64,000 nt of DNA from Hyphochytrium catenoides. Its lineage: Eukaryota; Protista; Hyphochytriomycota. Below the pieces are notes generated by a model. That model did not search any database. It was not told the origin of the DNA and saw only the letters and a list, made by a program, of their open reading frames with translations. A program made the position numbers and the translations under genes. The first letter of the stretch is position 1, and the number at the start of each line of letters is the position of its first letter. The stretch lies in NCBI GenBank assembly GCA_900088475.1, contig FLMG01002472.1, positions 18,979-82,978 on the forward strand, written 5' to 3'. Shown one piece after another: positions 5,821-63,591 of the stretch.

Positions 5821-5830
5821 GCCACCATGG
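5821..5830 (+). promoter_or_regulatory. Strong translation-initiation context GCCACCATGG for the giant gene
   Basis: Exact Kozak-type consensus around ATG 5827, followed directly by a signal-peptide-like MVRVQYLYTSLLTQCLLVWAVSNA. Confidence 0.6.
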
Positions 5831-8800
5831 TGCGGGTTCAGTATCTCTACACCTCTCTGCTCACACAATGCCTCCTGGTGTGGGCAGTCTCAAATGCCGC
5901 CGAAATGGTGACGCCAGCTGACTTTGTTCATCTATCTTGCGATACTAGCCCTGACACTGTCGCGTCGCCTTCGAGCAGGTATATTGTCATAATACTTAAG
6001 AGGCTAACTCAGTTTCTGATGCTAACCCTTCCCTCCATCTGCCGCAACGTCAGAATCAATGTCCAAAGCAGCATGGTTATTGTTGAGCGGGATGGTCTAC
6101 CTGTCTGCTACTTTGACGAAAGCTCTTTTATCACAGTGACGACGCACTTTGAAGATGCCACAGCGAGCTGCTCATTTGGTGGATCGGTACTAGTTAAGGA
6201 AGGCCCGGTACGCCAGCTGGGGCCGGTAACGCTAGTCAGCTCCGAAGGGAGAGGGGAGCTTGAGATCCGGCCAAGTTCCTCGAATCCCCTTGAAAGAGAG
6301 GTCGTCTTGAAAGGAGAGGGGCTAGAGGGCGGCGATGTGTTGGTTCTCTCTTTGCCAAATGATATCGGTTGGACATCTTTTGCCCTCTCAATAGACGAAG
6401 CCTCACAGACAGTAACACTATCGGTCAATCATCGGCACATCACTGCCACCCTAGGCTCTGGAGGTCTTGACATCTGCAAACAGTTGAGCGTGGGCACCGC
6501 GCCTGGAAGTAGTTTAGGGTTCCAAGGCTTTGGGCGAGACTTCTTTTATTTCCCTTCGCTTATGAGATACTCAGGGCAGACACAGCTGGCCTATACACAT
6601 TCAGGCCCTGACGTTATCGCTGGCAATGCAGGGTATGCCTTCCAACTAGCTAGCAGGAGCCATGTCACGGCGGAAATATATTTAGGCCCTGAAGCCTCAC
6701 TTCCAATCACCCTACAGGGCTGGGTGCGACCGCACAGTATTCAGATTGGGTCAAGTCAGCATATAATATCTTTGGAGGGACTGGGAACGCAGTCGTCGCA
6801 CAGTATCCTGGCAGTAAGTGTTCTAGGTCTTTCAAACAACCAGGCTGCATTGGCGTTGGAGTACTGGACAGTCGGACGTGAAGAAGGTTTTACGTGGGCC
6901 TCACCTCCTCTAGACTTTCGCAGCTTAGAAGGTGTCTGGAGTCATCTGGCGGTAGTGTGTCACTCTAATCAAGTTCAGATCCTTGTTAACGGCACAGAAA
7001 TGGGGCTTCTCAGGTTCCCTCTAGATAGTGCTCTGGCGTGCCCTCGTTGCGTGCTGCAACTAGGTGGGACAAGGGTCAGTACTCCAGGGCCCACCTTTTC
7101 ATATCGAGGTTACGTTGGAGAAGTGGACGAGTTCCAGCTCTGGCAAGGTGCAGCAGGTCCTGAGGAAGTTAGGCGTTACATGAAGTTGAAGCCAACAGGA
7201 GTGGAAACCGGGCTCTTAGGATACTGGTCCTTCGATGAAGGGGAAGGTAGCGTGATAGCTAACAGAGTCTACCATCAAGAGGTTTCGAAAGACATGGGGG
7301 TTTATAATACAGAGGCTCGTGTGGCAGGCGTTTGGACATCTTCTACGGTCCCTCTAGCTCACCAGGAGACAATGATGGGTGATTGGGAAGTCCCTCTCAG
7401 GTTCGAGGGTGTCAGCCGTAGATGCCGAAAATTGGAGGTAGTCTTAGAGTCAGTTCCAATTGTTGGCCTTCTTTACCTACATCACGATCGGCACAACGGA
7501 GAGTCAGACGCATATGATTTAGGTGTCGGCGACGCCTTTTCCCTTAACCACACCGTGCGCTTTAGAGCTTTGACGACGGATCTGACTAAGGAAGTCAAGA
7601 CGGAGGTCCAGTACAGGGTGCGGTGCAAAGGTTCGGCGGGTCTTTCAAGGAATGTGGCATTCATAGGACTAAGTATCATTCCCTCCCCGTCAAGTCCTTT
7701 ATTGACCCTGACGCCAGATGCTTCTATGGTTTTGCGCGGACTTAAAGTTGAAGATATTGATGAGTGGGAAGACAATGCCGGTCTAAGAGCTGCTATCTCT
7801 CTACAGAGTAATGAAGCATGGCCTACTTGCAACCTGTCTAGCCCTTTCGCCTCGATCGTGGTAGGGTCTGATGGTGATAGATGGCGCACAACACTTCCAA
7901 TGGTGGCTGCAACCCTTTCTGGCAGAGCCTCTCAAGTCTCGCAGATGCTAGGAGAAGTCAAACTCCGTACTGGCGGCGGTGATGTCAAGCATGGGGAGGT
8001 AGCTCTCGCAGTCCATGATGGACAGGGAGGATCAGCCTCTATGTCAATGGCTTTCGGTATCTCATTGACAATACCGCCGCCAGAAGTGCTGAGCGCCTGG
8101 CCACTGAGTGCACCGGTCGGTGGTGGTAACTTTGTCGTTGCTGAGGGACTGAACTTGGCGACAGGTAAATAGTTGCTGATTCCGCTCCGAGCGCCTTGTG
8201 GGGGACTAATTCTCAACGTTTCCTTTGTTTTCCGTCTATTGACAGGGCTAGTTTTCTGCAGCTTTGGCGGGCAGCGGCAACAAGGTGTTCTGATATCTCA
8301 CTTCAAAGTGCGTTGCCGCATTCCTCCAGTGCTTAGACCAAGTGCCATCCCTTTCGTCGTAATCACACCGTCAGGACAGAGCCTACCACTGGCCTTTACC
8401 TACTATGAAGAGCCTCACGTTGACACTGTTTCGCCATTGAGTGGTCCGCAACTGGGTGGAACCCGCATCTACATTAATGGAAACTTCTCTCAGGCACATA
8501 AAGCATGGTGTCGCTTTGGCTGGGAAAAGGTGAATCAGGTGGAGGCTGTAGCCATTTCTGAGAACCAGATGGAATGTATCAGCAGACACCAGTCAACCGC
8601 AGGAGATTTGCCTGTCTTCCTCTCGCTGAATGGTATCCACTTTCATCAGAGCTTTACCTTCAACTTCTATGAAACAGAGGTGGTATTAGCCGTCCAGCCG
8701 TGGCCTTCGGACTCAGATCACGACATGCAGACAATGGTTGTCTTGGGTATGAATTTTAGGAATTTCAGCTCGCTGGGATGTCAATCTGGGCTCCAGCGTC

Positions 8801-11800
8801 TTAAAGCTACATTCATCTCTTCGAATATTGTTCACTGTTCCTTGCCGGTTGAAAAAAGCGTCAGGATAGCCCAAGGAACTCTCGCTGTGGCAAACAATGG
8901 GAGAGATTATGGCTCCGCGGCGCAGTACGAGTTTGCCTTAGTTCCTACTCTTAGCAGTAGCCTCCCTTCTGCCATTCAGGGCACACGTGAGCAAGATATA
9001 CTCTTGCTGGGGCAGGGTTTCGCCCCAACGTCTGCTTTGCGTTGTCGTGAGGGTCGAGCGGTGACAAAGGGAGTCTATTTGTCCGCAGATAAAATGCGGT
9101 GCCGGCTTGGGAAGGCGATACCAGGAGAGGAGCGTGCGATCTCGGTTTCCCTCGATGGCTCTGCTTATAGTTCTCCTCTTTATATACCGGCAGTGCCCGA
9201 CCCCGTTGTCCTCTCAATTCTTCCCCCTCATCTGCAATCATCTGGAGGGGATCTTATTACCATTTTCGGAAGGTATTTGGGTCAAGGCTCGAGTCTGATC
9301 ACAAGGATTGTCTGTCGCAGTAACTCCACTATGACCACTGTCGCCGCGAGGGTGATCAGTGATGGGGTGGCCACATTTGATTTGCCCAAGCTTCTCCCGG
9401 GTGTCTACCGTCTTCAATTAAGCTTTGATGGTCAGCAGTTCTCACCTCTGTCTGATGAAGGAATAACCATTTTATCCGATAGGCTTGCTGTGGCTGGCAT
9501 TGACGGGCTTGAAGGCCCAGAAAGCGGGGGCACCAGGATCTTGATGACTCTTTCGCAGCCCTTAACCCATGGAGGTGCTCTTTCATGCATCTTTGGAACC
9601 TTGAGGGTCAAGGCATCCCTCACTGACCCACAGACAGCAACCTGTCTCTCGCCTCCAATGGTAGACGATGAGCCAGCTGTCCGAATGGCACTCACCTTCA
9701 ACAACATGGAGCTACCTGGAAAAGAGGTTCATTTTCAATATTTCCCAAACCCTCAAGTTCTATCTGCGGAGCCCACTTTTGTCCTGACTGGCTTAGCCGC
9801 TACGATCATTACTGTTGGAAACCATTTCCACAAAGGCGAGAGGCTTGCGTGTCGTGTAAAAGGGTGGGAAGAAAGGACCTTGAAGTTGGATTACCTATCT
9901 CAATCTGTGTCTGCCTGCCACATACCGCCCGAGATCACCGCCAGCCAAGAGGGGGCGTTAGAACTGGAGTTCTCCTTTAATGGAGTGCAGTGGTGGACTC
10001 TGCCGACGCTGGTGCAGATCCTCCCTTTGCCTGAAGTAGTGAGTATTCGGCCGACCTCAGGCATAGAGACAGGTTCAACTCATGTCTACGTTCAAGGCTC
10101 AGGCTTCCGAATGGAGATGGGGTTAGAGTGTCAGTACGGTGACTCGAGGATAACGGCGGAGCTCATTTCCGGCCGTCAGCTGTTGTGTCGATCCCCTCCC
10201 AGAGGGAATGAGGGCGAAGTGCCTCTTTCGCTGGTGGTGCCAAACCAATATACGGTGAAAACTGATATTCACTTTACCTACTTTTCCCCCCCAAACTGCA
10301 ACAGCATATCCCCCATCATGGGGAGTGTGGGTGTGTCTCACTTAGTAAGAGTCCATTGTGAATTAAAACATCCTTTGGAAAGTATGTACTTCAGCTTTGG
10401 AGACCATAAGAAACGATGCGAACACAAGGACGGCGGGCTCTATTTATGCGAGATAGGGCCATTGGTAGCTCCGGGCTCGCTGGACGTGTTTGCCAGCCTG
10501 AACGAGGTTGATTTCACAGCCACAGGGCTGAAGTTCAAGGTCCATCCGCCCCCCACCATAAAAAGCGTGAGGCCGGCTTACTGGAGCGGTAGCAGCCAGC
10601 AGGCCATTCATCTGACCGGAGCTCACTTTGAACAAAATGCTGCCGCGAAGTGCCGGTTTTCTGCTCCAGGAATGGAAACTATCATCACCTCTGCGACAAT
10701 TCACTCTCCAGTGTCTGTCACTTGTCAAGCACCTATTCTTAGCTCTTTCCAGTCAACCACAATAGTCCGTGTGCAATTCTCCTCCAACGGGGAAGAGTTC
10801 AGCTTCAGCATGGGCCATCTCACGGTATTGGGGGGAGCGGAAGGAACACAAGTTCACCCTCCAATTGGAAGCCCCGAGATGAGGGTACCCATCGTCTTCT
10901 ATTCCTCACTATTTCTAACCATGTCAGGCAAGGCGAAGGCGGGATGTGTGTTCAATGGTACGACTTTGTCGCCGGCGAAGGTCAGATCCGGAGGCTGGGT
11001 ATCCTGCGCTCCCCTCAATTTAACGGTAGGGGAAGCTACAGTTTCGTTCGTGGTTGGAAACGCCTCACAAAGAGTCGGCCAGTTCAAGTACCTGGTGCTT
11101 GATGATCCTGTGATCGAGAATTCACATCCTCCTGTCATTATTGCCGGCAAGTCCACTGAGGTGGTACTGACGGGGACAAATTTCCACAATTCTGGCGGTG
11201 GCTCTTGTAAGGTCGGCAACTTAGAGGCGCCGGTTGTGACGCGTATAAATGCAACGGCTCTGGTATGTCATGTGCCTCCGTTGTTTCCCGGGAAGCACCC
11301 GCTGGGCCTCAGCATACACCTGCCCCACTTTATAAGAGCCCCTATTGACCTCACGGTTGTTCCGCAGCCGACAATCCGGCACATCTCCGCCATGTGGGGT
11401 TTCTTTGGCACCAGTAACTCCTTAGTACTCGAAGGGCGGAATTATCTGGAAAATCGAACATTCTGCAGGTTCACAGCCGATGGCAGTACTGAAAGCGTGA
11501 TTGTGTCTGCCATAGGAGATTCGCGTACCATCTCTTGCACAGTGCCGGAAATGAAAAGTGCTAGAGGGCTTCTCAAAGTAGAACTGACCCTCAACCATTA
11601 CGATTACCTTCTAGTTGGCTTCTACGAACTGTTGGAACCGCCACAACTGCTCTCCATTTCTCCTTTGATGGGCTCGGAGGAGGGTGGGACTACCGTAACA
11701 ATCACTGGAGGACCATTTCCCAATAGGCCTCTGAAGTGCGGCTTCGGTGATTACGCTACTAACCTTCAAGTGGCGGAGTGGGTGAGCAACGAGCAAATCC

Positions 11801-14800
11801 GTTGCGTGAGCCCTCCAGCATCTCCTGGAGTGGTCCGTCTCTACATAACTTCAGATGGTTTATCGTTCAGTCACGGCAGGCAGAACTTTACCTATCACAG
11901 CCAAATTTTCTTGACATCTCTGAAGCCCGTGCACCTGCCAATCACTCGTTCCGCTGGGATATCAGTGTATGGAACTGGATTTCAAAACACTTCAGATTTA
12001 GCTTGCTTGTTTGGTACTAATATCACACCAGCTAAATTCCACAGCTTGTCGCACATCACCTGTTACCCGCAGCAATCTTTTGAAGACCTTGCCATGGACC
12101 AAATAGAGATAGCGGTCTCACTAAATGGGGTGGACTTCTCAAAGTCCTCAGTTCCATTTCCTGTTGAGCGTCCAATCTCTGCAAGAGCGTTACCCTATGC
12201 CGGGCCATCCTCTGGAGGGACCAAGGTCGTGATTACTTCCATTGAGGAAAAGCATAACAGAACAGCCTTCGGGTGCACGTTTCAAGATCGCTTCGTTCTG
12301 GGTGTGTGGGAGCCTAACGGACTCAGCTGCACAACACCTCCAGGGATTGGGACTATTAAAGTGACTATATCGTCAGAGGAGACGACGCTATATAAGCCGC
12401 AGATATTGGAATTTCACTATTACGGTGAGAAAGGGGTTTTAGTTTGATTCAGAAGCATCGTGAGGCTGATGTACGTTTCTCCTAGATGACATTATTGTTA
12501 GCACTATCTTCCCAACGCAGGGACCGGATGTTGGGAATACCAGAGTGTTACTGCTAGGTATATTTCCTAGCCACGAGACTCTGTCCTGCAGGTTCGGTGA
12601 TGTATTAGTGGAGGCGTTTTGGCACCACAAAGGCGCTGTTGAATGCATATCTCCTCCCGGAAAACCAGGACCGTCTACAGTGCAGGTGACTGGAAATGGC
12701 AGAGACTTCTCCCAACCCCTAAGATTCCACTATACAGGTAAGTGCACCAGCTACTTATCAGTTATATGTTGTCTCTAACCTCTGCCGATAGGTGTCTTGA
12801 CCGTCACGGCGATCCACCCGTACGTGGGAGTGACAAATGGGAACTCTGAAGTCGTTCTGTACGGAACGGGGTTCACTAACGACTCTAGATGCGTTTTTGG
12901 GGAGATGCATGGTAGAGTTCTTCACTTCAGTGATACCAGTCTTCGCTGCTTCTCTCCACCTCAAGCACCTGGGACCTACCCCATCGGTGTGGTCACCGGC
13001 AAAGAGCTCGTCATGTCACGAGACCTATGGTATACATACCGAGCCCTACCAGAAGTGGGAGCGCTACGGCCGAACTCTGGACTTTCACGAGGGGGGACAC
13101 TGGTTGAGTTGGACGTCATCTCCAACCTCCCACCAAGTGGCTTGTGGTGCAAGTTCGGTAGCCTGGCCCCTTCTATGGCTATCATCGACACAAACAATAG
13201 GGTCTTTTGCCAGACTCCAGACATTAACTCTTCCAGCAGCTCAGAGCTTGCTATGGTGCAAATCTCTGTGAATGGCTACGACTTCTTCAGCGTCGGGTTA
13301 TCATTTCTGTACTATCGCGACTTTGAAATGTCTAAAGTGGTTCCTGACACTGCCAGCGAGTTGGGGGGGACAAGGATTAAAGTGTTTGGTGCATTTCCAA
13401 AAGGGAAACTCTACTGTTTATTTGAGGACAAGTTTGGGAATGTGAAAGCTGGTAGCGCATCTCCTTCTCCCACCTTCGTGATCTGTCGGACCCCTCCAGC
13501 CCCACCCGGAAAGTACCATCTCAGCATCGCCCCAAATGCCGTTGACCGGTCATCTACAAAGCTGACCTTTACCTACATTGAGGCGACGTGGGTTTCGAAG
13601 AGTTTGCCTGATACAGGGCCTGCAGAGGGGGGAACAACCGTCAGGGTACTTGGATCAGGAATCCGGAACACTACACGGCTGGCATGTCGGTTCGGAAAGG
13701 TCATTGTTCCTGCGAGATTTATTGACCGCACCGCCGTCTCTTGCACGACTCCACCGTACACCGATAGCACACCTGCTTCCGTAACCCTTGATGTGAGTTT
13801 GAATGGCGTGGATTTCAGCATTGGAGGTGTGATGTACAAGTACGTAAGGCCCATGAGCCTGTTAGAGATTCAGCCAAGATTAGGACCAAGCAGAGGCAGT
13901 ACCAACGTCACCATCAAGATTGATGGAGCACAGGGCCGGGATAAGCTGCCCTGTTACTTTGGAGATCAGCATGTCATTTGTCACGTGATAGGCAGCGACC
14001 TTTTCTCCTGTTCATCTCCTCCGCATGACCCAGGAACAGTGGCGGTCAAACTCATACTTGAGAATCAAGAGATGTCGATACCGTCCAAGACCTTCCATTA
14101 CTATTCCCCTGTGAGAGTCTCGAGTGCTATACCTCGTGTTGTACCCTCTGGTGGGCGGACGTGGCTGACAATATCAGGTGGTGGTTTTCTGCCGAGTCCT
14201 GACCTCTCGTGCATGGTAGGAGAAAAGAGAGCCCAATTCTCGTATTGGCTCTCTTCTACCGCGGTAGCCTGCTTTGTACCAGGTCATAGGCCGGGAAAAT
14301 ACCAAGTCAGGGTGTCGAACAACGGTCAGGACTACAGTCAGGGAGCCCGATATGTCGTATACGAGGACCCTATAACCGTGACTGCGGTGACGCCATCTTC
14401 TTTACTGCTAACGGGCGGCATAGTGACAGTCAGGGGAAGTGGCTTCAATTCCTTTCAACATCTGGAGTGCCACATTGGAGGCATGGATCCCACCCCTGCT
14501 GTGTATCTAAACGCATCAGCCGTCAAGTGCTTTTGCCGCGGGAATGAAGCTGGTCAGTACGAGGTCGTGCTAATGGACGCGCTAAAAGGATGGGCCAGCA
14601 GCAAAACAACTCCTGTCCATCTCAAGTACCAGCCATTGCCTGTTGTCGACGATATAAACCCGTCGAGGGGAGGACTGAAAGGCTCCACAGTGATAACCCT
14701 CTCGGGGTCAGGTTTTGTCAACTCTACGACTGCGATTTGCAGGTTCTGCTGGAACTCTAATGGACACTGTTCACCATCTGCCCAGTCACCAGCAGAATAC

Positions 14801-32800: not shown

Positions 32801-35800
32801 CTTAGCAGCAGATTCCCCTTTTAAGCCGTTTCGAGGTCGGTACTGCCTGGATGATAGCTGTATGCTGCTAGATGATCTGGAAAATCTGGCTGTCGCAGAC
32901 TATGCCTTCGATTACTCCTCCACGGCTTTTGCTATGCGCAGGCCCGTTCCGTGCCCAGCAGGAACTTATTGTCACCCAGGCACCGCCAGCGAACTCACTA
33001 CAATGCGAAACCTAAGCTCCCCTCAGCCTTGTATCGAAAGCATGTACTGCCCGACTGGTACCACTAGTCCGCATGGAGTAGGTGATTGTCCGCGGGGATT
33101 TTATTGCCCGTTTGGTGAGAAGTTACCATGCCCCGCAGGAACCTACTGTCCACGCTCAGGACTGTTCGATCCGCTTCCATGCGCGCCTGGAACCTTTAAT
33201 GCTATGGTCGGGCAAGAAAGTTGTACACTGTGCCCTGCTGGATACATATGCCCTGGTTTCGGTCGCCTGCAACCCACAATTTGTCCAAATGGATACGTTT
33301 GCAGCAAAGAGACTCTAGCCTCGCCAAATATTCGGTGCCCCAAGGGATTTTTCTGCCCCAACGGCACCATTACGTCTGATCCATTCCGCAACGATACTAC
33401 TCTAAGACCTTACCCCTGCGCGCCAGGAAGTTTCTGCATGGGTGGTGTTGGGTACGACGAGGTCCGACCTGGTGATTTCCTGTATGCCCAGCCGTGTAAG
33501 CCAGGCTTCTACTGTGAGCTCGCATCGGTATCTCCTCAAGGTTCAGGTCTTTGTCCCAAAGGATTTTACTGTCCGGAAGGGACGGCGGTACCTATCCCTA
33601 CGCCTAAGGGCAAGTATGCTGCCACAGAGGGAACTGTACGACCAGCAGACTGCTTGCCAGGTTACTACGCGCCAACTATAGAGACTGTACTTTGCTACCC
33701 ATGCCCCCCTGGAACCGAGTGCGAAAGCGACGGGATGAGTGAGGCTGTGGTCTGCCCCCCTGGTACATATAGAGGCTCTCTGGAGGACGATGGTATCACT
33801 TGTCTTCCATGCCCTAAGGGTACATGGTCTAAGAATTGGGAACTCCGAGATATTTCTGAGTGCACGCCTTGCCCAACAGGAACAGTCTGTCCAACCGATG
33901 GTATTATGGCGCCTTGCAGTATGGCAGATCTTCCCACGCCTTACGAGCCTGTGACTGGAAAGATGCTAAATCAGGAGGACTGTCTCAAGTTGGGAAGTAA
34001 CTACTTCTTTGGGGTCCTCTTAGAGCCATGGATTGATAACAAGGGTAGAGGGCCACACTTCCGGTCATGGAGAAATGGCACCTGCTTTTACAACAGACAG
34101 AAGGACGGCTCTGTGGTGTACCAACGGTTCAGAGATTACTTTGGGCCCATGTTCGATATAGTAAGGGGCGTGCCGCATCAAGGATATGGAGACGCTGGGC
34201 AAGTAACCCCACCTCACTTTTTCGGTCGGGGGTCCTTGTACATCAATCTGGACAACTCGCGTAAGTTCAACCAGACCTTTAACTGTACTCCTGGATTTTT
34301 CCAGTGGAACGATATTTTGCAAGGAGACCAGTGGTATCCAGGAACTTGTGAAGCAGATATTTTTTGCTACTCTTCGGAACCTTCAAGGGTAAAGCCTTGT
34401 CAGGAAGGGTTTGTCTGTGATGAGCGGACGGGCTTCGTGGAACAGTTCCGCAGCCCTTGCAAAGAAGGTTATGTATGCGACTTTGGAACAACACCAGATA
34501 CCTCATTACTAGCTCCTCAAGGGCAGTACAAACGGCTATGCCAAGAGGGGTATTATTGTTTAGATGAGTCAGGACCAAGTACTTTCAAGAACTTTCCTTG
34601 CCCGACAGACTACTTTTGCCCGACAGGTACCGCCCGACCAATGATTGGTTTGATGGCGAACGATGCTTTGAATCGGCAGCTAGACACACAATCAGCAGAT
34701 CCTTTCTTCAATGTTGTTCACCAAGTGGGGCTCTCCATTGATGACCACAAACTCATTTCCGACCACGATTTCCGTTGTCTGAAAGGTGCTAGCCAGGAGC
34801 TGCAGCAAAACTACATCTATCAAAGGGATCCCGTCAATGGCAAAACCAACTGGACTACCGTGGCGATTATGAATGACCTTTACTGCGGCAGGGACCACAA
34901 ATGGAGACACGTGGCGAACGCTATTCACCGCAAAGTTTGCAACTGCACGCAGCAGATGCAGGTTATCCAGCGTATCTTTGAGTTTTGGAAGTGTACCACC
35001 AACCTCTCTAAACAATTTGATGACATTGGCTATGCATCTTTTGAGGCTGTAGGTGGTGGCTATGACGTCTGGCACCCTCGAAGGAAGCTGCTGTCTGCTA
35101 ATCAATGCCGCTATTACTCTCAAAATGGCGGGCTACGGGACTATCGGGCTGAATTAGAATCCGGTGGTGTGAGCTTTCGATGGGCTTGGGCAAACACAAG
35201 CCGCTTTGGATCCTACGAGAACCTGAAGCAGTTGGTGACAGAAGAATTTGATCGACAGGAATTAGAGTTGGCCTTCCAGCAAAGATGGGAAGTAGATCCA
35301 TTTCTTTACGATATCTGGGCTGGGCTGCGCCTCATCAATCAATACGGCGACAATGTGCCCGAGCTTATCAAGCTCAATTTGACTACAATGGAACCCCTCC
35401 GTCTGGATGTCTGCGAGTGCCAACACCTTCTTCGGTGTCCAAATGGGACCTCCTCGACTGCCTACAGCAAAAGTGTGTTCGATTGCGGGGGCTTGAAGGA
35501 CCCAGTTGTCATCAGAAGGTTCATGCCAATCCCTCTTACAAACGGTAGACTTGATAATGGAACGGACTTCAAAATGCTGACTGGCTCAACCGGCACTGCT
35601 GGACTTGGTCAAGTGGAGTTGCAAACTATGGAGGTAGCCATACTTTCACTGAACTTTACTAGTATGTCCACGAACCTTACGTATGGGCAACATTATGAGA
35701 TCTCTGCTTATGTGGGTTGCAAGCCCTGCCCACCGCAATACATGTGCCGGTATGACCTAACAGAGCCGTATTGTCTTTCCCCCTCTGAGGATGATCAGAG

Positions 35801-38800
35801 CTTGGCGTATACCGAATGCGCCACCCAACGAGGTGCTCAGTACTGCCAGAGCTTACCTTACTTCTGCTCTGAAAAAACCTGGCCAGGTTACGCTGTAAAT
35901 GTTGAAGGAGAGGCCATCATCCAAAATCACGTCCAACCAGGCTGTTGCTCTTGTATGGCAAAGAGGATGCCCTTCTACTTTGCAGACTCATCAACTAAAG
36001 ACCCCGGCTATCCAGATAACAAGCACACGCTCTTGCAGACGTCCTTCACTGCTCTGAAGCCTCTTAACCTCACGCTGGCCGTAGAACTGAAAGATGCCCT
36101 TTACCTTGCCGAGTTTGATAGTGCCATGGCAGCATCTCGCCCCGACCTCAAGATCTTTTCCCCATCCAGAGCTGTAGTGGATAAGAAGATAGAGCTAGGG
36201 AACAATGGCGAGGTCCTTCAGAGGGATACTAACATCTTCTCTTTCCTGGCAATCATTCAAATGGAGGATTTTGACGAGCTGATGCTACCACTGAACCTTC
36301 CTCTAAGTCAATCCAAAGACTTGAAGACAGGGGCTGTATTAGGAGGTCTGGAGGAAGATTTACTAGTTGACCGCATTTCCGATATTCGTGTCGGGAACGA
36401 AGACTATCTCAGAGACTTCAATCTTTCTAGCTACACAATGGAAGATAGCTATGATCCCACCTATTGCCAGCAAGCCTTAGCTGACTCCTCGAACGAGCCT
36501 GACAACGATTTGGTGGGACAAGAATGTCCCTCTTTGGGCTCTGATCTCTCTCTCACCCCGTCGACGTACCTGCTCGGCTCTGGAGGAATAGACCCATATC
36601 CAGTAGTCATTCCTACGGAAAAGACGCAGATGGGGTCCTCCTTTTGGACGATGGGAGACACGGAGCCATTCGAGTTCTTGACTCTGCCCTATCTGCCATT
36701 CTTTTCAAATTGTGAAGGCTATGGGAGCCGGTAAGAAAGTGTTCTGTTATGCAGTTGCATCATTGTTTCCGAATCATTGAACTTTGTGCTTTAGTGTGAG
36801 CATCAGCAAGCTGGTTGAGGATCATCCCGAGTGTGAGCTGGTGCCAGAGAGCAGCACTATGGAGGTTGATCAATACCCATGGAACGACAAAATGACCCCA
36901 GTAGCAGACCAATGCCTTCACAGGGTTACTACACCAGCTGGGGAAAACGTCACTGAAGGAATAAGCCTAAAGTGTCAATATGAGGTAAGCCTGTGGTGAC
37001 ACAGTAGTAGCCCTTCCCGTGTTCTCGATATTCAAATCCTAATCCGTCAGTTGACATTTTCCGCCCCTCTGAATCTCCTACAATGAAGTAACGCCCTTTA
37101 ATCTATCCCTACAGGAAAATATTGATGCTCCTGCGGAGAAGAAGCGATGGTTTGAGGTTGATGCCGGAGAGACACTCTTTTACTTAACAAAAGAAGCAAT
37201 TGCTCAGAGCCAGCTCGAGGGAGTACCGTACACAGGTAAACAAGAAACGACTTCCGTGTTCAGGCAAAAGGTTGCTTGTCCACCCATGTGACTCAACCGT
37301 TTGGGTGCTCCACAGGCCCATCGACGGTACCTGTTTATGAGCGACCGCCAGAGCAGAAGTGGGGAAGGACGGACTCACTCGAAAAATTGCGGAAGTCAGA
37401 CATGCTTATCACGGTGGCACGTAAGTTGCATATAGAAGATCAAAGAGGAATTTAAAACATGACAGTTTCCCTGCTTTGGCAGCTATTGAAGACCGAGGTG
37501 GCCAGAGGTTTTGGATACCGAGAAAAGTGAGACTCACCATTGAATACTATCAGGTTCGAGCAAGTAAAATTCCTTATTGCAAGGTGGCCATTTTAACGCC
37601 ATTCTCCAAATGCCTATCACTGTAGAGAACCAAGGAGCTAAAAGAGCTTGTGAACGCCTATCTTGCTTTCGAGGACTCGTGTACGACTGTGAAGAAGTAA
37701 GAATAGTTTTGAGATAACTCTTGGCGGCAACGTTTCTCCTTGACTTAGAACTCCCCCTTTTTCTTGGTACGCTACTCACTTGTCTCTTCCTGATGTGACA
37801 ATAGCACAAATGCCACTTGCGAGCTAGATGCGATAACAAGCACCATTAAGAGTCGAGAGTATGAGCTGGTGGTGATCTATGAGCCCCTTTCGTGGTTCTA
37901 CCTTCTAAATCGCTTCCAGTTTTCCTTCGACGTCTACATTGCAATGTTCTTTTTGGTTGGTATGTCAACCATGGTGGAAGCGGTAAGTCTCGATAGGTGC
38001 GGAAGCAGCAAATTCTTAGCTAGGCCGGTGGTAAAAAAGGTTCTGAATGGCCAATTCATATTGGGCAATTATGTCTGAAATTGAAAAGGAACATACACGG
38101 AGCTATACGTGTCCCTGACTCGAGTTTTCACGTGTGCAGATTCTGATCTGGTTGATCAATCGGATCCTGACCCGACTACGTTACCCTCCACCTCTAAGGA
38201 TCAAGGCATTTCTACCTGTCATCGTACCTCAGCCGTTCTTTGGAGTCGCAATTGCCTCACTTCCATTCATCTTATTTATGATCATTTTCTGGGTCTGGTG
38301 GGTTGTTTTCTCCTCGTCGGTAAGTGAGCATTACGGGAAAGTAGAAGCAACGCCTAGAGCATACCAACGACCTCAAAGTCCAATGTGTTGTTTTCCGAGT
38401 TAAATCTTACAGCGCTGGGCCGTCTTGTCAAGCACGTACTTTCCTTGTGGAGTTGACACGTTTCCAACAGGACCCCAAACTTCGTCCCAATCCTCTGTCT
38501 TTTGAAGACTGGAACGGCGATTGGATGAATGTTGCAGCGCTGGACGCCACCCTAGTTCGTCAGTATAAAGTTGGGCGATTTGGGGTCTCCTTGTTTGCGC
38601 TAGGCGTCTTCGGCGTATTCACATGTGAGTCCGGAGTATGGCTCTGTCTTTTACGCACATCCACAGAAAGCAAGGAACAGAGAGGGGTTGTCGTGTGAAG
38701 CATCCGGGAGAGGTTCCCTGTGAATCATTGGTAGTCTAATTGGGATACGGGAATAGCAAGCGAATGATCAAACGGCAGAGCGCAAGGAGACTCTCGCAGA

Positions 38801-41800
38801 AAAATACAACTGAACTGGTTGCCATTGTCTAATCTCTCTGCCTTGTACAGCTATGAATGCCATGATCAATGACAAGTTCGACAATCGGCCAGAGGACGAC
38901 GTGCAGCAAGAAGCGGCCCTTGAGGACCAACTTGACGAGGAGATCGACATTTCCGACCTAAAGCCTAATCCACTATGGCAGCCAAGACAGTGGCGACGGT
39001 CCGCTTACCTCCTTGCCATCGTAGCGACAATGTTTCCCCTCCTTATTGTCTGGGAGTTTTCGTATTCAAAGGCATTTGCAGACTATTTTCTGCAATTAAC
39101 CTTCATTTACCGGTTCCTATCGGCAAGGCTGGGTCTTATTCCAGAAAGGTACGGTCTGCTACTGGTTTGCTTTAGCGATTATTGGCAGCTTGCTTCTGTC
39201 GGCATCCTTGCCTACCTTTTTACGGCGAAAGAGCTTGCAGTGATAATCCCCACCTAAATGGCGGTATTGGCCACTTCTCTATTCTTTCTATGCAATGATC
39301 TCCTCTAATCTGCTTCGGAACTCTTTTAATCTTTTGCTGTAGATTCGTAGATGGCGAGAAACTCTTAGTGGACCCAATGAACATCATGATAGACTTTACT
39401 GGCTTCGTGGTTGGAATGGGTGCACCAGAGTTCACTTCTTTCCTATGGGGATCATTCATGGACACGGGCCTCAACCTTCTATTCAGAATATATGTGGAGT
39501 TTGCAATGGAAGAATTTATCAACCACATTCCGAAATGGAAAATGATGATTAAGAGGAAGTTAAGAGGGAGGAAGAGACTTACAAGAGAGGAAAGAGCTAA
39601 AGAGGTAAGAAGTAACCCTAAAAAGGGCATCCGGACCTGTTCTTCTAACTTCTCCCTGCAGGAAGCACAATGGCGGGAAATCAACGAAGAGTTGGAGCTG
39701 AAGGCTGAAGGAGTGGAACCACTACTAAATATGTTCAACGCCTACACTCCAGGCGTGGTCTGCTCGTACTTCAACCCTCTACTACTTCTCTTCTTCATCG
39801 CCTTCTACGATATTATCCAGATCCCTTCTCTGTATGGGCTTTCGAGGCTGTCTCTTCTCTACTACTTCCTTTCTCAGGTTATGCTCATCCCTGCATGCCG
39901 TTTCCTGGATATATTCGTGTTCAACATTGTGGAACTCGTGTACGGTCTCAAGGTGTATGATTACATATCGTATCAGAAGTATCGTTTCAGTGTCCGAGAG
40001 AAGAGATGGCAGCTGGACAACGATGTCTTTGATGAGAGTATTGAAGAACCGATGCAGTCTATGGACAACCTTTGCTTCTCCTCCCAGTACTACTTCATAT
40101 CCACCTTCTCGGGGTTATCGTGCTTGTTCATTCTCTTTGCAGTACAGATTTTCCATCACACCAATTATCATTTCCTAGCGGATCCAGCTCTTCCGTTGAT
40201 TGTTGTTATCGTGTGGGCAATGGCCTTTGTGATGAAGATCATCCTTCTCAAGGTAAGGAGTTGGGGAATTCTCCCTTTACCTGCCCTGCTTGTACCTCTC
40301 TTTGGGCTATCCAAAGATCGTCTGCGCGAGGTGGTCTTATCAGTTTATCTTGTCTGACCTGCTTGTCTGCTGGCTCTGCTACGTTTGTAGCTGGCCGACA
40401 AAGCAAAGCTCTGGAAAACCAAGAAGCTGGAAGGGACAGTGGATGACGACATTGCGGCCAAGCTCGCACTGGGAGAAGGCAGGAACGCTGATCTAGAGAG
40501 AGAGAGATTGGAGCTACAGGCCATGAACTCAGAAAGGTTTAGGCATCGCTTTCTTGAGAGGAATAGACCATGGATTCTTCAGCACATGGTAGGCATGTCT
40601 CGACCTCCTCGTTCTCCTGATGACCCTTTGTCTTCGCTGCGGTCGTCACTCTGTCGACTATCTCCTTTGGTCATAGAAACTGTAGGTAAACGTAAGCGCT
40701 TTGTTTATTCGGTGTTCTATATCAGGTCGAGCTGCTAACGCCGCGCACTCTCGGAATGCCGGGTCCTGATGGACGGCCCAACGTTGAGTACATTCGGGAC
40801 GTATACAACGACCTCATGAGGCTAGGAGAAACTGGAGCCTTAGGGGGAGGAAAAGGACCGGGGGGCGCAGGAGCAATCGCTGGGTGAGCGGATTGCACCA
40901 TCTCCAATCGTGTTCGTCGTATTGCTTGCGTTCTGCAGTGGATGAGGTCAACATATTGACCGCTTGTTTCTTCTTTCCGCATCTTATGAACGAAGCTCAA
41001 CACTACGGTGTATCCTCCCTCTGGCACATAATTGCCTTCGACTCACCTTCCCTCACTGCAGTTTACTAACACCTTAACGCCATTGATTTAGAGATATCTC
41101 GTCTGACAGTGAGGACGAACAGGAGCGGCAGAGGAGAAACTGGTCCAAGGTCCCTTTGTCAGGCACATCGCGCGTTATCGCCGTCATGTGGCTGAAGAGG
41201 GCAAGAAAGAGAAGGACCTTCTCCTCTCTGATTGCTGGTAGGAAATTACCCCATATCGAGCTTGCAAACCTTGCCACGGTCACTTTTGAAGTCCTTGCTC
41301 CCATCTGCTCTGTCAACTCTGGCCCGCTCGCTCATATTTCTTGTGCTTAGTCGGTTCGTCTGTTCGTTGACCCATTCTCCCCCAAACTATAGGTCTGCTT
41401 TGCCAACTCTGGCCCGCTGGCTCATATTGCTTGTGCTTAGTCGTTCCTCTGTTCGTTGACCCATTGTCCCCCAAACTATAGGGTTTATAAAGCAGAACGT
41501 GGGCGATGAATGTGCCCTCTGCCATAAACGGACAGAGCATGGTGCATCAATGGTTTGCCATCTGGCTTCCGAAGACGGTGCAGAGGCGGATCCTCACGCT
41601 TTGGATAGAATTATTCGAGGATTTGAAGAGAAGCATGGACCAGAAGAAACAAATCCGGAGCTGTGGAAGGCATTCTTCCGGTATGCCCGAGTGTGCTCTA
41701 TTAGTAAAAGCGCTATTGGAGGCACTTATTAGGGTCGCATGAGCTTTGTGAAGAGATGAGAGTAAATGAGTTGTGGAAGGAGGATGCCCTTTAGTCTACG

Positions 41801-43602
41801 GTGCTCTAGGTTGGCACCAATTATCATAGCAAAGATTGGGCAGCGGTGGGCACAGAATGACTGCTTCAAAGTTAGGACTGCGTACTAGAAGTCCGCTGAG
41901 GTTGATCGAATAGGTAGCGCTAACTCTCCTCCAATTCTTGGTCTCTGCGATCACTCAATGCAGCACAAACGCGAGATACATCACGCGATGCACAGCGTGC
42001 ATATCCTCTCTTGAGAGAAAACACCTTGAGGCCCTGGCACAGGCCAGAGCGACGCGTCCGGAGGACATCTCCTCTGACGAGGAGGAGGAAGAGGTCGTGT
42101 TCGACCCTGTTGTTGTCGCTCGATCATCTGCAGAGGGGAGGGTGATGTCCAAATGGCTAGGGGCCGCTAGAAAGAGACTAGGCGGTGCCTTTCCTCGGCC
42201 TACTGCGCAAAAGGAGATGGAGGCCTATGCCAAGAGGATGAGGGAGAAGAAGGCCGCAAGAGGAAGAAAGCGAGCAGTACGTCAACCTTATACTATTCCT
42301 ATCGTTTTATCGTGACACTTTATATGAGCCCTCTGGTTAGCTTTCCCCTAGAATTTTTATTGTTGGGCAATATTGTGAGCGACGTGTTCTCTTTCTCCAT
42401 TCTCTAATCACTATTATTTTCTCTTCTTATTCCTGTAGCTGGCGGAAGAGAGAGATGAGCATCCAGAGTGGCAAGTGGAGCTTTCTTTTGCTTCCAAGGC
42501 CATTGCAGTCAAGTGGCTAAGAAAGGGAAGAGAGAGTCGTTTTACTGCCCTGAGAGAGAAAGGCAACAATTTGCGTCTCCAACTCGATGACTTGGTAAAG
42601 AAGATGCCTCCAGGCGAAGACTGGTTCTTTGGGGCAGAGGTCAGGTTGGAAGGAGAAGGCTTGCTGAAGAAGGGAGAAGAACTAAGGGAAGAGCAGGTGA
42701 GAAGTAGAGATAACTCAATGGAGATTGAATGTTGTCTGTCTATCTACCTTGGGAACTGACTACATCCTCTTATGCTTGGTAGCGCAACATTGAAGCTGAG
42801 GAGCGCGTGAAGATCAAAAAGGTGGAGGAAGACCTGAAGAAGCACCTTCTGGAAAAGAGAGAGGTAGTCCAGCCTTCTCTCCTCATTGTATCTCTATGAC
42901 TATAGTGTTTCATCTTTCTTGACGCCAAATGAATCCAGACTTACCATTTGTCACCGTCTTATGCCTTTCCCTAGGCCCTCGATGTCGAACAAGTCGGATT
43001 CGATCAGAAGCTCGCTGCAGAATGGCAGAGCATGATGGAGAGAGTAGAGGCACGAGAAAGAGAGCTTCTGGATTTCAGAAGAGCCAAAGAATCTGAGTTT
43101 GCGGAACTAGAGAGGATTGCAAAAGAAAAGGACGGCGCTCCATCTTCGAAAATGATAGCAGAGCACCATAAAGCCCTCCAGGATCTGGACAAACAGCGAG
43201 AGGAAGAGAAGGCTCGCCTTATCGCTAGCCAGGAGCAGAGCCACGCGGAATTAAGAACCGAGTTTGACAATAACTTGAACGCCGCAGAGACTGCTCTTAT
43301 TAACCGTCAGGTCATGGCGGCTGAGAGGATTGAAAACATCCATAAGGATGCGCTCAACAAGATGCAAAGCAAGGAACAAGAGTGGCAGCAACAGGTAAGG
43401 TGACTGCATTCGATAGTGTGATCGTTCAGAATACCACCACTTGATTGTCCTACGTTCGCTCATGAGTCTGACTACTTTATCCACACATTCTGTGCCCCTT
43501 CAGACCTCTGCCTGGATAGATAAGGCCGCCCGAAAGGTCTCGGTAAAGGAGAGGGAAGATGCAGAAGCTGCTCTCAATGAGAAGAAGAAGAGACGTGCAT
43601 AA
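5827..43602 (+). CDS. Giant (11,459 aa predicted) multipass cell-surface protein: signal peptide, LamG-like, about 60 IPT/TIG, EVQ-repeat inserts, Cys-rich repeats, about 9-11 TM, cytoplasmic coiled coil
   Basis: 30 exons joined in frame by GT-AG introns: 5827-5978, 6054-8164, 8246-12424, 12486-12737, 12792-15518, 15605-17443, 17521-17991, 18045-21368, 21441-21775, 21834-36730, 36795-36984, 37115-37235, 37316-37420, 37483-37553, 37626-37696, 37805-37982, 38140-38319, 38471-38624, 38851-39148, 39343-39604, 39662-40252, 40391-40588, 40726-40883, 41092-41237, 41482-41680, 41964-42276, 42439-42696, 42783-42863, 42975-43394, 43504-43602. Sum 34,380 nt; every junction is phase-matched and IPT motifs continue across junctions. 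Ends ...EKKKRRA-TAA. Confidence 0.88.
6100..7350 (+). other. LamG/concanavalin-A-like (pentraxin-type) domain region of the giant protein
   Basis: ITLQGWVRP ... GVWSHLAVV ... VQILVNG ... LQLGG ... YVGEVDEFQLW ... GLLGYWSFDEGEGS at about 6700-7350 follows the LamG-3 pattern. A more degenerate copy (WTSFALSID...LSVG...FQGFGRDF) precedes it. Confidence 0.75.
23625..27170 (+). repeat. EVQ-repeat insert 1 (10 units, about 1180 aa) inside one IPT domain
   Basis: Unit consensus E(V/I)Q-x-(V/I) ... G-x-F-x-L-x-(F/Y)-x-G ... (Y/F)DAS ... V-x-x-AL ... V-x-V ... W-x-VTF ... LP-x-L ... V-x-G. Flanked by the two halves of an IPT domain (VLCLTPPG / TLRVSTNGVDYS). Confidence 0.8.
28023..29680 (+). repeat. 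EVQ-repeat insert 2 (5 units, about 550 aa) inside one IPT domain
   Basis: Same consensus; flanked by VICSSPSH and VAVGVSANKKDIVFSSVNFEY. Confidence 0.78.
30546..30900 (+). repeat. EVQ-repeat insert 3 (single unit) inside one IPT domain
   Basis: LSCETPSQ-[DEVQVLDI...GTFALSGG...YLITFTGGLGAIPLL...LVSG]-VPLHISFNGQDF. Confidence 0.78.
32283..34635 (+). repeat. Cys-rich CPxG(T/S/F/Y)(Y/F)C repeats (GCC2_GCC3 / ephrin-receptor-like type)
   Basis: More than 20 motifs such as CPTGSYC, CPRGAYC, CPAGTYQ, CPIGYIC, CPEGHFC, CPKGFYC, CQEGFVC. Confidence 0.85.
37930..40252 (+). other. Multipass transmembrane region (about 9-11 helices) of the giant protein
   Basis: Spliced hydrophobic segments include VYIAMFFLVGMSTMVEAILIWLI, FGVAIASLPFILFMIIFWVWWVVF, FGVSLFALGVFGVF, AYLLAIVATMFPLLIVW, YFNPLLLLFFIAFY, LLYYFLSQVMLIPAC, YYFISTFSGLSCLFILFAVQIF and PALPLIVVIVWAMAFVMKIILL. 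Confidence 0.8.
41304..41482 (+). repeat. Tandem duplication (90 + 89 bp) of an intron 3' end including the acceptor
   Basis: 41304-41393 and 41394-41482 both read TCTGCT.TG.CAACTCTGGCCCGCT.GCTCATATT.CTTGTGCTTAGTCG...TCTGTTCGTTGACCCATT.TCCCCCAAACTATAGG. Confidence 0.95.
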
Positions 43603-58815: not shown

Positions 58816-58864
<49 letters not shown>

Positions 58865-63554: not shown

Positions 63555-63591
63555 NNNNNNNNNNNNNNNNNNNNNNNNNNNNNNNNNNNNN

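What the first reader, a model, noticed from the sequence alone, without database searches (positions are those of the whole stretch)
5827..43602. A single 37.8-kb gene encodes an 11,459-aa receptor-like protein hidden as many separate ORFs
Seen: the long + strand ORFs from 5800 to 43403 join through 29 canonical phase-matched introns into one frame with one signal peptide and one terminal stop, giving a protein of over 1 MDa. Order: LamG-like head, IPT stalk with three inserts, Cys-rich repeats, multipass TM region, signalling-type tail. Known: fibrocystin has IPT arrays; polycystin-1 has a long Ig-like ectodomain, 11 TM and a coiled-coil tail; alveolate CRMPs combine Cys repeats with a multipass region. 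I do not recognise a characterised protein that combines all of these. Inference: a very long tethered adhesion or mechano/contact sensor.
Basis: partly seen in the sequence, partly recalled or inferred. Interest (0 to 1): 0.9.

Follow-up and report, generated by a model that had tools for sequence, protein, structure and literature searches.

The report
Giant stramenopile TIG-stalk multipass membrane protein
One intact 37.8-kb gene in a soil protist related to water moulds encodes a 1.25-million-dalton surface protein, a chain of about 65 Ig-like domains fused to an 11-pass membrane module of unknown function, and it belongs to an unstudied family found across stramenopiles.

Summary
An independent rebuild gives one + strand gene: ATG 5827, stop 43600-43602, 29 GT-AG introns, 30 exons, 11,478 aa, 1.25 MDa (reader: 29 introns, 11,459 aa).

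No RNA run could be found. Support comes from three sources:
- The C-terminal exons tile a 1,445-position profile of 56 homologues in order.
- Several Ig-like domains span the proposed introns.
- Natural variants in other DNA runs behave as expected: 15 of 16 exonic SNPs are synonymous, and all 10 well-covered indels lie in predicted introns.

Order of parts: signal peptide, LamG_3 head, about 65 divergent IPT/TIG domains, three inserts inside TIG loops (16 copies of an unnamed 100-aa domain), Ephrin-receptor-like Cys repeats, a composite juxtamembrane ectodomain, 11 predicted membrane passes, and a conserved 620-aa tail.

It is not unique. Uncharacterised proteins with the same layout (about 7,000-7,900 aa) exist in Phytophthora, Aphanomyces and Albugo, and shorter or partial relatives occur in brown algae, diatoms and Cafeteria. 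This copy is the longest seen.

The membrane module has no Pfam family and no solved relative. Its only structural lead is a sub-threshold TMEM16/TMC resemblance. A tethered contact or force sensor is plausible but untested.

Earlier notes of this scan cover parts of this same stretch, not this family on other DNA.

The parts
5827..43602 (+). Whole coding region: 30 exons, 29 GT-AG introns, 11,478 aa, 1.25 MDa. Introns: 5979-6053, 8165-8245, 12425-12485, 12738-12791, 15519-15604, 17444-17502, 17992-18044, 21369-21419, 21776-21833, 36731-36794, 36985-37114, 37236-37315, 37421-37482, 37554-37625, 37697-37804, 37983-38139, 38320-38452, 38625-38850, 39149-39342, 39605-39661, 40253-40390, 40589-40725, 40884-41091, 41238-41481, 41681-41963, 42277-42438, 42697-42782, 42864-42974, 43395-43503.
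   Evidence: Variant test.
5827..5901 (+). Start codon in a CCACCATGG context, followed by a signal-peptide-like N-terminus (basic residue, hydrophobic core, small residues before the likely cut).
   Evidence: Sequence read directly. No signal-peptide predictor was available.
5979..6053 (+). Probable stop-free, in-frame 75-nt intron with a CAG|GTATAT donor, two CTAAC branch-like motifs and a CAG acceptor. If kept, it would place a hydrophobic, non-domain stretch in the head.
   Evidence: No independent support.
6703..7170 (+). Laminin_G_3 / concanavalin-A-like lectin domain in the 700-aa N-terminal head.
   Evidence: Pfam PF13385, E = 1.2e-9, 38.9 bits against a cut-off of 27.6. The rest of the head matches no fetched homologue.
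8080..32279 (+). Stalk of about 65 IPT/TIG (Ig-like) domains. Mean pairwise identity is 24% and the maximum is 42%. Several domains span introns.
   Evidence: Pfam PF01833, E from 1e-45 to 1e-143 per exon. Internal HMM count 65-66. Divergence.
23670..27242 (+). Insert 1 (1,191 aa), inside a TIG domain between profile positions about 65 and 66. It holds 10-11 copies of an unnamed domain of about 100 aa.
   Evidence: No Pfam family. Similar unnamed clusters occur in diatoms, green algae and oomycetes.
28110..29759 (+). Insert 2 (550 aa), following a truncated TIG match. It holds 5 copies of the same unnamed domain.
30612..30854 (+). Insert 3 (81 aa, one copy of the unnamed domain), splitting a TIG domain whose last strands resume directly after it.
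32280..34274 (+). Cys-rich repeats of the Ephrin_rec_like (GCC2/GCC3, TNFR-like) type.
34275..37910 (+). Conserved composite juxtamembrane ectodomain: Cys ladder, helical subdomain and two beta-sandwiches. It has many invariant Cys residues. No GAIN/GPS domain was detected.
   Evidence: AlphaFold2 model of window:34200-36731, pLDDT 80, pTM 0.78. No whole-domain PDB match. No Pfam family.
37911..40252 (+). Membrane module with 11 predicted passes, N-terminus outside and C-terminus inside. Approximate passes: 37920-37976, 38239-38310, 38570-38852 (spans an intron), 39003-39059, 39075-39140, 39377-39424, 39440-39517, 39752-39808, 39866-39949, 40094-40150, 40190-40246. A basic cytosolic helical hairpin lies at 39533-39727. 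The most conserved loop lies at 39956-40096.
   Evidence: Hydropathy. AlphaFold2 model of a homologue, pLDDT 83, pTM 0.80. 551 relatives found by HMMER. No Pfam family.
40391..43599 (+). Cytosolic tail of about 620 aa. Parts: a near-invariant post-membrane helix (40496-40752); four basic 'WL..ARKR'-type motifs, two of them preceded by acidic DISSD(E/D)n runs (41093-41215, 42064-42186, 42481-42540, 43380-43539); a CxxC...CxxC zinc-finger-like segment (41511-42000); a long helical, coiled-coil-like segment (42975-43394).
   Evidence: Conservation across 56 homologues. No Pfam family.
43600..43602 (+). Terminal stop codon. The homologue profile ends 2 positions before it.

Best explanation
This is one intact, selectively maintained nuclear gene.

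Shown:
- Its product is a 1.25-MDa membrane protein of about 11,480 aa, the longest member seen here of a family of giant proteins found in every stramenopile group sampled here and not yet characterised.
- A signal peptide and a lectin-like head are followed by about 65 Ig-like TIG domains. Side arms of an unnamed 100-aa domain are inserted into TIG loops.
- Next come Cys-rich repeats and a compact conserved ectodomain that sits directly on an 11-pass membrane module.
- A conserved 620-aa tail follows.

Inferred:
- At about 4 nm per Ig-like domain, the stalk would reach roughly 0.25 micrometre from the cell surface.
- The tail is cytosolic, and the protein is oriented with its N-terminus outside.
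- The protein works as a tethered surface filament. Binding or pulling at the far end would be passed through the rigid juxtamembrane ectodomain to the membrane module.
- The module's pass order fits the OSCA/TMEM63-type layout (one extra N-terminal pass plus ten). The module may therefore act as a gated pore or lipid groove.
- The output would be read by the basic and acidic tail motifs, the zinc-finger-like segment and the coiled coil.
For: Gene unity
- The exons from 36.6 to 43.6 kb tile a 1,445-position profile of 56 homologues in order, from position 33 to 1443.
- Single proteins elsewhere carry TIG array, Cys repeats, membrane module and tail together. Examples are P0162 (7,171 aa, with LamG_3), P0174 (7,930 aa), P0107 (7,926 aa) and the transcript-derived P0151 (5,327 aa).
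- TIG domains span introns 1, 4, 6 and 8 of the model, which are the 2nd, 5th, 7th and 9th of the final 29.

Selection
- Of 40 listed SNPs against other DNA runs of the same organism, 24 are intronic, 15 are synonymous and 1 is non-synonymous. That one becomes intronic with the alternative acceptor.
- 10 of 10 indels in the two well-covered runs lie in predicted introns, which make up 41% of the stretch.

Domains.

Membrane module
- Confident AlphaFold2 model.
- 11 passes with positive-inside loops.

Tail: motifs conserved across the family.

Indirect: TIG-domain proteins are reported as distinctive of the zoospore proteome in Phytophthora cinnamomi (PMC8360494). That paper does not identify this family.
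Against: - No transcript, protein, localisation or phenotype data exist for this gene or any relative that I could find.
- No member of the family hits the Anoctamin, RSN1_7TM or TMC profiles, even at E of 10 or less.
- A different weak lead exists: S. pombe C553.12c and TAPT1.
- No OSCA structure appeared among the matches.
- The topology is inferred from hydropathy and a predicted model of a homologue, not of the window's own protein.
- The N-terminal head matches no fetched homologue. Its link to the rest depends on one strong splice junction and on a TIG domain that spans it.
Confidence: 0.6

Rival explanations
1. Passive anchor. The protein is a structural surface fibril or coat component (glycocalyx, adhesive pad or flagellar hair-like appendage). 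The multipass module only holds the huge ectodomain in the membrane, and the tail ties it to the cytoskeleton. There is no gating or signalling.
For: - About 90% of the mass is ectodomain built from adhesion-type modules.
- There are 83 N-glycosylation sequons in the ectodomain.
- The Cys ladder resembles that of the Chlamydomonas mastigoneme protein Mst1, at low Z.
- No enzymatic or known signalling domain is present in the tail.
Against: - A single helix would be enough for anchoring.
- The 11-pass module and the tail are the best-conserved parts of the family, with invariant polar and charged residues at the cytosolic face.
- They are under purifying selection.
- The module also occurs in far shorter proteins without the stalk (hits of 300-1,000 aa, though many of these may be fragments).
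Confidence: 0.27
2. CRMP-like trigger of regulated secretion. The protein sits at a secretory organelle or exocytosis site and couples contact with a surface or prey to the discharge of vesicles. Alveolate CRMPs are proposed to do this for rhoptries.
For: - It shares the general layout of Ephrin-receptor-like Cys repeats followed by a multipass core.
- CRMPs are described as Cys-rich proteins with 9 membrane passes, forming heterodimers and having Dictyostelium homologues (PMC9815656).
- Oomycete zoospores discharge vesicles on contact (own knowledge).
Against: - No CRMP sequence or model was available for comparison.
- The pass count differs: 11 here against 9 reported.
- No protein named as a CRMP appeared among the named hits.
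- CRMPs are not reported to carry TIG arrays or a long conserved tail.
Confidence: 0.08
3. Over-joined model or dead gene. The open frames belong to two or more adjacent genes, or the locus is an unexpressed relic.
For: - No RNA evidence could be obtained.
- Public annotations of relatives often end before the membrane part (P0160 and P0156).
- The head has no detectable homologue.
Against: - Profile tiling is colinear and gap-free.
- Full-length relatives exist, including transcript-derived ones.
- Domains span the junctions.
- There is no frame break in 34.4 kb of coding sequence.
- SNPs are almost all synonymous, and indels are confined to introns.
Confidence: 0.05

Closest known systems
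Uncharacterised stramenopile 'IPT/TIG domain-containing proteins', e.g. Phytophthora fragariae PF005_g5786 (P0162, 7,171 aa), Aphanomyces stellatus Aste57867_9322 (P0174, 7,930 aa), Albugo laibachii CCA22724.1 (P0107, 7,926 aa), Cantina marsupialis transcript (P0151, 5,327 aa)
   Same: - Same order of modules: (LamG_3), TIG array with or without the unnamed insert domain, Ephrin_rec_like repeats, conserved juxtamembrane ectodomain, 11-pass module, conserved tail ending within about 10 residues of the C-terminus.
- 40-48% identity over the C-terminal 1,500 aa.
   Different: - The window's protein is about 45% longer than any relative listed.
- It has the most TIG domains: 65, against 7-59 in the relatives.
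- It has its own count of insert units: 16, against 0-29.
- Its 750-aa head has no detectable sequence match to theirs.
- None of these proteins has been studied.
Fibrocystin (PKHD1) and PKHD1L1
   Same: Very large surface proteins whose ectodomain is dominated by IPT/TIG arrays. They are associated with sensory organelles, cilia and stereocilia (own knowledge).
   Different: - They are single-pass proteins with G8 and PbH1 / parallel beta-helix regions and only about 12-14 TIG domains.
- Here there are no G8 or PbH1 hits, 65 TIG domains, Cys repeats, 11 passes and a long conserved tail.
Polycystin-1 (PKD1)
   Same: The layout is analogous: a long Ig-like-repeat ectodomain, a conserved juxtamembrane ectodomain, 11 membrane passes and a C-terminal coiled-coil-type tail.
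   Different: - No PKD repeat, REJ, GAIN/GPS, PLAT or PKD-channel Pfam hits.
- No polycystin chain appeared among the listed structural matches.
- This is a resemblance in design, not membership.
Alveolate cysteine repeat modular proteins (CRMPs)
   Same: Ephrin-receptor-like / EGF-like Cys repeats followed by a multipass core. CRMPs are proposed contact-triggered signalling devices (PMC9815656).
   Different: - CRMPs are reported with 9 passes, a Kringle or lectin domain and no TIG stalk.
- Homology of the membrane cores could not be tested here.
TMEM16 / OSCA-TMEM63 / TMC superfamily of channels and scramblases
- The inferred order of one extra pass plus ten, with N-terminus out and C-terminus in, equals the OSCA/TMEM63 layout (own knowledge of that family).
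   Different: - No sequence-profile signal.
- No OSCA chain appeared among the matches.
- The large cytosolic insert lies after pass 6 rather than between passes 2 and 3.
- No Ca2+-site residues could be mapped.

Membership tests
Stramenopile giant TIG / Cys-repeat / 11-pass family (uncharacterised) | Long tandem IPT/TIG array in the ectodomain | tested here: met
   PF01833 at E from 1e-45 to 1e-143 in every large exon. 65-66 domains by internal HMM.
Stramenopile giant TIG / Cys-repeat / 11-pass family (uncharacterised) | Ephrin_rec_like Cys repeats between the stalk and the membrane | tested here: met
   PF07699, five stretches, E = 1.6e-6, above the gathering score. The same family is found in P0001, P0023, P0167, P0171.
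Stramenopile giant TIG / Cys-repeat / 11-pass family (uncharacterised) | Colinear match to the conserved C-terminal region of about 1,445 positions (juxtamembrane ectodomain, membrane module, tail) | tested here: met
   20 exon pieces tile profile positions 33-1443 in order, with individual E-values down to 3.6e-94.
Stramenopile giant TIG / Cys-repeat / 11-pass family (uncharacterised) | N-terminal LamG_3 head | tested here: met
   PF13385, E = 1.2e-9. PF13385 is also precomputed for P0156, P0160, P0162. Direct sequence similarity of the heads was not detected.
Fibrocystin / PKHD1 family | G8 and PbH1 (parallel beta-helix) regions after the TIG array, and a single membrane pass | tested here: not met
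   No such Pfam hits in any exon. 11 predicted passes.
   No Pfam hits. The juxtamembrane model matches no GAIN structure.
Polycystin-1 family | PLAT domain in the first cytosolic loop and a TRP-like last six passes | tested here: not met
   No PLAT or PKD_channel hits in 49 family members, even at E of 10 or less. No polycystin or TRP chain appeared among the listed structural matches.
Polycystin-1 family | 11 membrane passes, N-terminus out, C-terminal coiled coil | tested here: inconclusive
   Hydropathy plus the AlphaFold2 helices give 11 passes. The tail is predicted helical and charged. No coiled-coil predictor was run.
Alveolate CRMPs | Ephrin-receptor-like / EGF-like Cys repeats upstream of the membrane core | tested here: met
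   PF07699.
Alveolate CRMPs | Homologous 9-pass conserved core | not testable with these tools
   No CRMP sequence or model could be obtained. The pass count here is 11 against 9 reported (PMC9815656). No hit was named as a CRMP.
TMEM16 / OSCA / TMC superfamily | Shared ten-helix core fold | tested here: inconclusive
- Foldseek: E > 0.2, TM-score 0.16 or less.
- All of this is below the tool's bar for helical folds.
TMEM16 / OSCA / TMC superfamily | Match to the Anoctamin, RSN1_7TM or TMC sequence profiles | tested here: not met
   None among 49 members at E of 10 or less. The profile search against PDB sequences found nothing.
SPCC553.12c (PF28488) / TAPT1-DUF747 (PF05346) membrane proteins | Sequence or fold match to these families | tested here: inconclusive
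   - Foldseek probability is 0.98 and 0.90, but TM-scores are only 0.2-0.36.
- Language-model neighbours score 0.60-0.77.
- There are no Pfam hits.

The most novel reading that the evidence does not exclude
The family is a previously unrecognised branch of the TMEM16 / OSCA / TMC channel-scramblase superfamily. In it, a quarter-micrometre Ig-domain filament is fused to the pore-forming module in a single polypeptide, a 'tip link plus transduction channel in one chain'. This would give stramenopile cells (for example zoospores) a direct mechanical or contact-gated ion or lipid signal.
Probability: 0.15. Interest if true: 0.9.

Novelty: new variant of a known kind. Interest (0 to 1): 0.62.

Why it matters
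If the model is right, this is among the largest proteins encoded by any microbial eukaryote.

It defines a conserved receptor-like family found across stramenopiles. That group includes major crop and fish pathogens (Phytophthora, Aphanomyces, Saprolegnia) and dominant marine algae.

The family's membrane module and tail have no Pfam family, no solved relative and no paper that I could find. How zoospores and other stramenopile cells sense surfaces, touch and each other is poorly understood. A surface filament joined to a conserved multipass module is a concrete, testable candidate for that role.

The gene also shows that public annotations of this family are commonly split or truncated.

Tried and rejected
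- RNA evidence. No RNA run was listed for 36500-42400. A second search found only small DNA runs of the same organism, two metagenomes and one relative's RNA contig of 217 nt. Laying them gave no splice joints.
- Pure codon and splice-site modelling over-extended the gene past the true stop and picked weak donors. It was replaced by profile-guided junction picking.
- Pfam on the membrane module, tail, inserts and head found nothing beyond LamG_3, TIG and Ephrin_rec_like.
- A PDB sequence search with the module profile found nothing.
- Metazoan giant GCC2/GCC3 proteins (Trichoplax, Hydra, fishes) share only the Cys repeats and lack the C-terminal module.
- Taxonomic placement through the neighbouring DnaJ gene failed: best hits were 41% identical, to plants and fungi.
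- A profile search for shorter named relatives gave only six unnamed hits.
- A language-model search of the tail pointed to HNH endonucleases at noise level. This probably reflects only the CxxC...CxxC motif.
- A direct CRMP comparison could not be made.
- Literature searches for the family returned nothing specific.
Full report
**What is in the sequence**

The + strand between 5.8 and 43.6 kb carries a run of very long open frames. The largest is one uninterrupted frame of 4,984 codons at 21780-36731. The window has about 50% GC, so stops are expected roughly every 21 codons and such frames are not chance.

All the large frames score strongly for IPT/TIG domains, with PF01833 E-values from 1e-45 to 1e-143. 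The first frame also scores for Laminin_G_3.

**Gene model**

A dynamic programme using codon usage and splice-site scores joined the frames through GT-AG introns, but it was unreliable in the intron-rich 3' part.

I therefore collected relatives and aligned the C-terminal 1,400-1,500 residues of 56 of them. I built a profile from that alignment and searched every open piece of 35.5-45.5 kb with it.

Twenty pieces in alternating frames tile the profile in strict order, from position 33 to position 1443 of 1445. The tiling ends at the stop codon 43600-43602. Phase-compatible GT-AG pairs exist at every junction, most with GTAAG or GTGAG donors.

Two refinements followed:
- A stop-free 75-nt intron at 5979-6053. 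If kept, it would put a hydrophobic non-domain stretch right after the signal peptide.
- An 81-nt exon at 42783-42863, which fills a 25-position hole in the profile.

The final model has 30 exons, 29 introns, 11,478 aa and 1.25 MDa. The difference lies within three or four ambiguous acceptor choices.

**Independent support for the model**

No RNA run could be found. The runs that hold the locus are genomic and show no splice joints.

They do differ from the window by natural variants, and those variants test the model:
- Of the 40 listed SNPs in 36650-42640, 24 lie in predicted introns, although introns make up only 41% of the stretch.
- 15 SNPs are synonymous in the predicted frame.
- One SNP is non-synonymous. 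It sits 5 nt inside an exon whose alternative acceptor (38139) would make it intronic, so I adopted that acceptor.
- All ten indels seen in the two well-covered runs fall in predicted introns. One of them, plus three SNPs, falls inside the stop-free 57-nt intron 39605-39661. Homologue alignments also skip that stretch by 19 residues.
- The two exonic indels occur only in a run with 3-5x depth.

In the 5' half, TIG domains are split by introns 1, 4, 6 and 8 of the model (the 2nd, 5th, 7th and 9th of the final 29) and come out at normal length after splicing. This ties the unmatched first exon to the rest.

The TIG domains are only 24% identical to each other on average, with a maximum of 42%. 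The array is therefore not an assembly artefact of a collapsed or inflated repeat.

**Architecture**

- A signal-peptide-like start.
- A 700-aa head with one LamG_3 lectin-type domain.
- About 65 TIG domains.
- Three inserts placed inside TIG domains. The interrupted domain stops near profile position 65-75 and its last strands resume after the insert. Together they contain 16 copies of a 100-aa domain with no Pfam family. Language-model neighbours of that domain are unnamed clusters from diatoms, green algae and oomycetes.
- About 650 aa of Ephrin_rec_like Cys repeats.
- A conserved juxtamembrane ectodomain of about 1,000 aa.
- A membrane module.
- A 620-aa tail.

At about 4 nm per Ig-like domain (general knowledge), the stalk would be roughly 0.25 micrometre long.

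**Relatives**

An exhaustive HMMER search with the largest membrane exon found 551 proteins, 76 of them below 1e-30. Many are 3,000-7,900 aa long with the match near the C-terminus.

Named members come from:
- Oomycetes: Phytophthora, Pythium brassicae, Aphanomyces, Saprolegnia, Lagenidium, Albugo.
- Ochrophyte algae: Ectocarpus, Laminaria, Chrysoparadoxa, Triparma, and the diatoms Thalassiosira, Leptocylindrus and Cyclotella.
- Bigyra: Cafeteria, Cantina, Incisomonas.

All are annotated as hypothetical or 'IPT/TIG domain-containing'. The family therefore spans every stramenopile group sampled here.

Several single proteins, including transcript-derived ones, carry stalk, Cys repeats, membrane module and tail together. 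The number of TIG domains (7-59) and insert units (0-29) varies between them.

The window's protein is the longest seen. One search only admitted candidates up to about 8,700 aa, but the HMMER search had no length filter and its longest listed hit is 7,926 aa.

Best identities are 40-48%, so the source organism is not close to any named species. The stretch is also held in part by soil and rhizosphere metagenomes. Earlier notes of this scan describe the genome as a soil stramenopile near oomycetes.

Metazoan giant Ephrin_rec_like proteins share only the Cys repeats.

**The membrane module**

Hydropathy, positive-inside loops and a confident AlphaFold2 model of a transcript-derived homologue (pLDDT 83, pTM 0.80) give 11 passes with the N-terminus outside and the tail inside. 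The arrangement is:
- One pass, then ten.
- A disordered acidic cytosolic loop after the third pass.
- A long helix that continues from the seventh pass into a basic cytosolic hairpin.
- The family's invariant polar residues clustered at the cytosolic face between the ninth and tenth passes.

No Pfam model matches any of 49 members, even at E of 10 or less. No PDB sequence matches the profile. Foldseek finds no solved fold. AlphaFold DB clusters return only uncharacterised family members.

This is consistent but below the tool's stated bar for helical proteins. Sequence identity is 5-9%, and no OSCA chain appears. A second weak lead points to S. pombe C553.12c and TAPT1. I treat the TMEM16/OSCA/TMC resemblance as a lead, not a classification.

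**The juxtamembrane ectodomain**

The window's own sequence (34200-36731) folds confidently as one compact body (pLDDT 80, pTM 0.78). Its parts resemble:

The whole matches nothing solved, and there is no sign of a GAIN/GPS domain.

**The tail**

Alignment of 56 relatives shows these conserved features:
- A nearly invariant helix just after the last pass.
- Four basic amphipathic 'WL..ARKR'-type motifs, two of them preceded by acidic serine runs that look like casein-kinase-type sites.
- A CxxC...CxxC segment likely to bind zinc.
- A long charged helical region.

No known domain is detected. Calmodulin or acidic-lipid binding by the basic motifs is my inference only.

**Interpretation**

Shown:
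- One intact gene under purifying selection.
- The domain order.
- Membership of a conserved, unstudied stramenopile family.

Inferred:
- Surface exposure with the stalk outside and the tail inside.
- Function as a tethered filament whose load or ligand state is passed to the membrane module.
- A possible pore or groove function of that module.

Rivals are a passive anchor for a surface fibril, a CRMP-like trigger of secretion, and (now unlikely) an over-joined or dead locus.

Comparisons with polycystin-1 and fibrocystin are analogies, because their defining domains were tested and are absent. The CRMP relationship could not be tested with the tools at hand.

I found no publication on the family. 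The nearest is a remark that TIG-domain proteins are distinctive of the Phytophthora cinnamomi zoospore proteome (PMC8360494).

**Verdict**

The functional reading is plausible but untested. The gene is the largest known member of a family that already sits, unnamed and often truncated, in public databases.

Noticed in passing
window 44000-60000: Long purine- or pyrimidine-skewed low-complexity tracts. GC and AT skew reach +/-0.3. GA/CT-type runs read as SLSLSL or ERERER in the ORF list. No convincing coding frame follows the giant gene until about 60.7 kb.
   Followed up: no
window 60707-62423, minus strand: A DnaJ/Hsp40 gene in at least two exons: the J-domain ORF at 62103-62423 and the C-terminal domain ORF at 60707-61927. 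The best database hits are only 41% identical, to plants and fungi, so the lineage is poorly sampled.
   Followed up: partly
window 63555-63591: A run of 37 N (assembly gap) inside a GA-rich repeat.
   Followed up: no
window 2656-3030, + strand: An upstream open frame with a weak, sub-threshold hit to the sperm-tail PG-rich repeat (SHIPPO-rpt, E = 0.021). It may be a flagellar protein gene next to the giant gene. No link to the gene was found.
   Followed up: no
window 23670-30854 and relatives P0174, P0177, P0183, P0151: The unnamed 100-aa insert domain (16 copies here) occurs 0-29 times in orthologues. It has unnamed neighbours in diatoms, green algae and oomycetes. One structural row is a phage tail-tube family at a TM-score of only 0.40. 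This deserves its own domain definition.
   Followed up: partly
window 36650-42640: The three DNA runs labelled as the same organism differ from the window and from each other at about 86 sites plus 13 indels in 6 kb. This indicates strain differences or heterozygosity. Intron diversity is clearly higher than exon diversity.
   Followed up: yes
window 39660-39876: A 223-nt contig from a run guessed to be RNA, from a different organism label, matches this exon at about 96% identity and starts within 2 nt of the predicted exon start. It is too short to prove splicing or expression.
   Followed up: no
AlphaFold DB cluster A0A7S3NIH4: A 1,120-aa fragment automatically named 'Ion transport domain-containing protein' carries this membrane module at residues 343-994 (E = 4.7e-28). 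A fusion with an ion-transport domain would bear on function, but the sequence could not be inspected.
   Followed up: no
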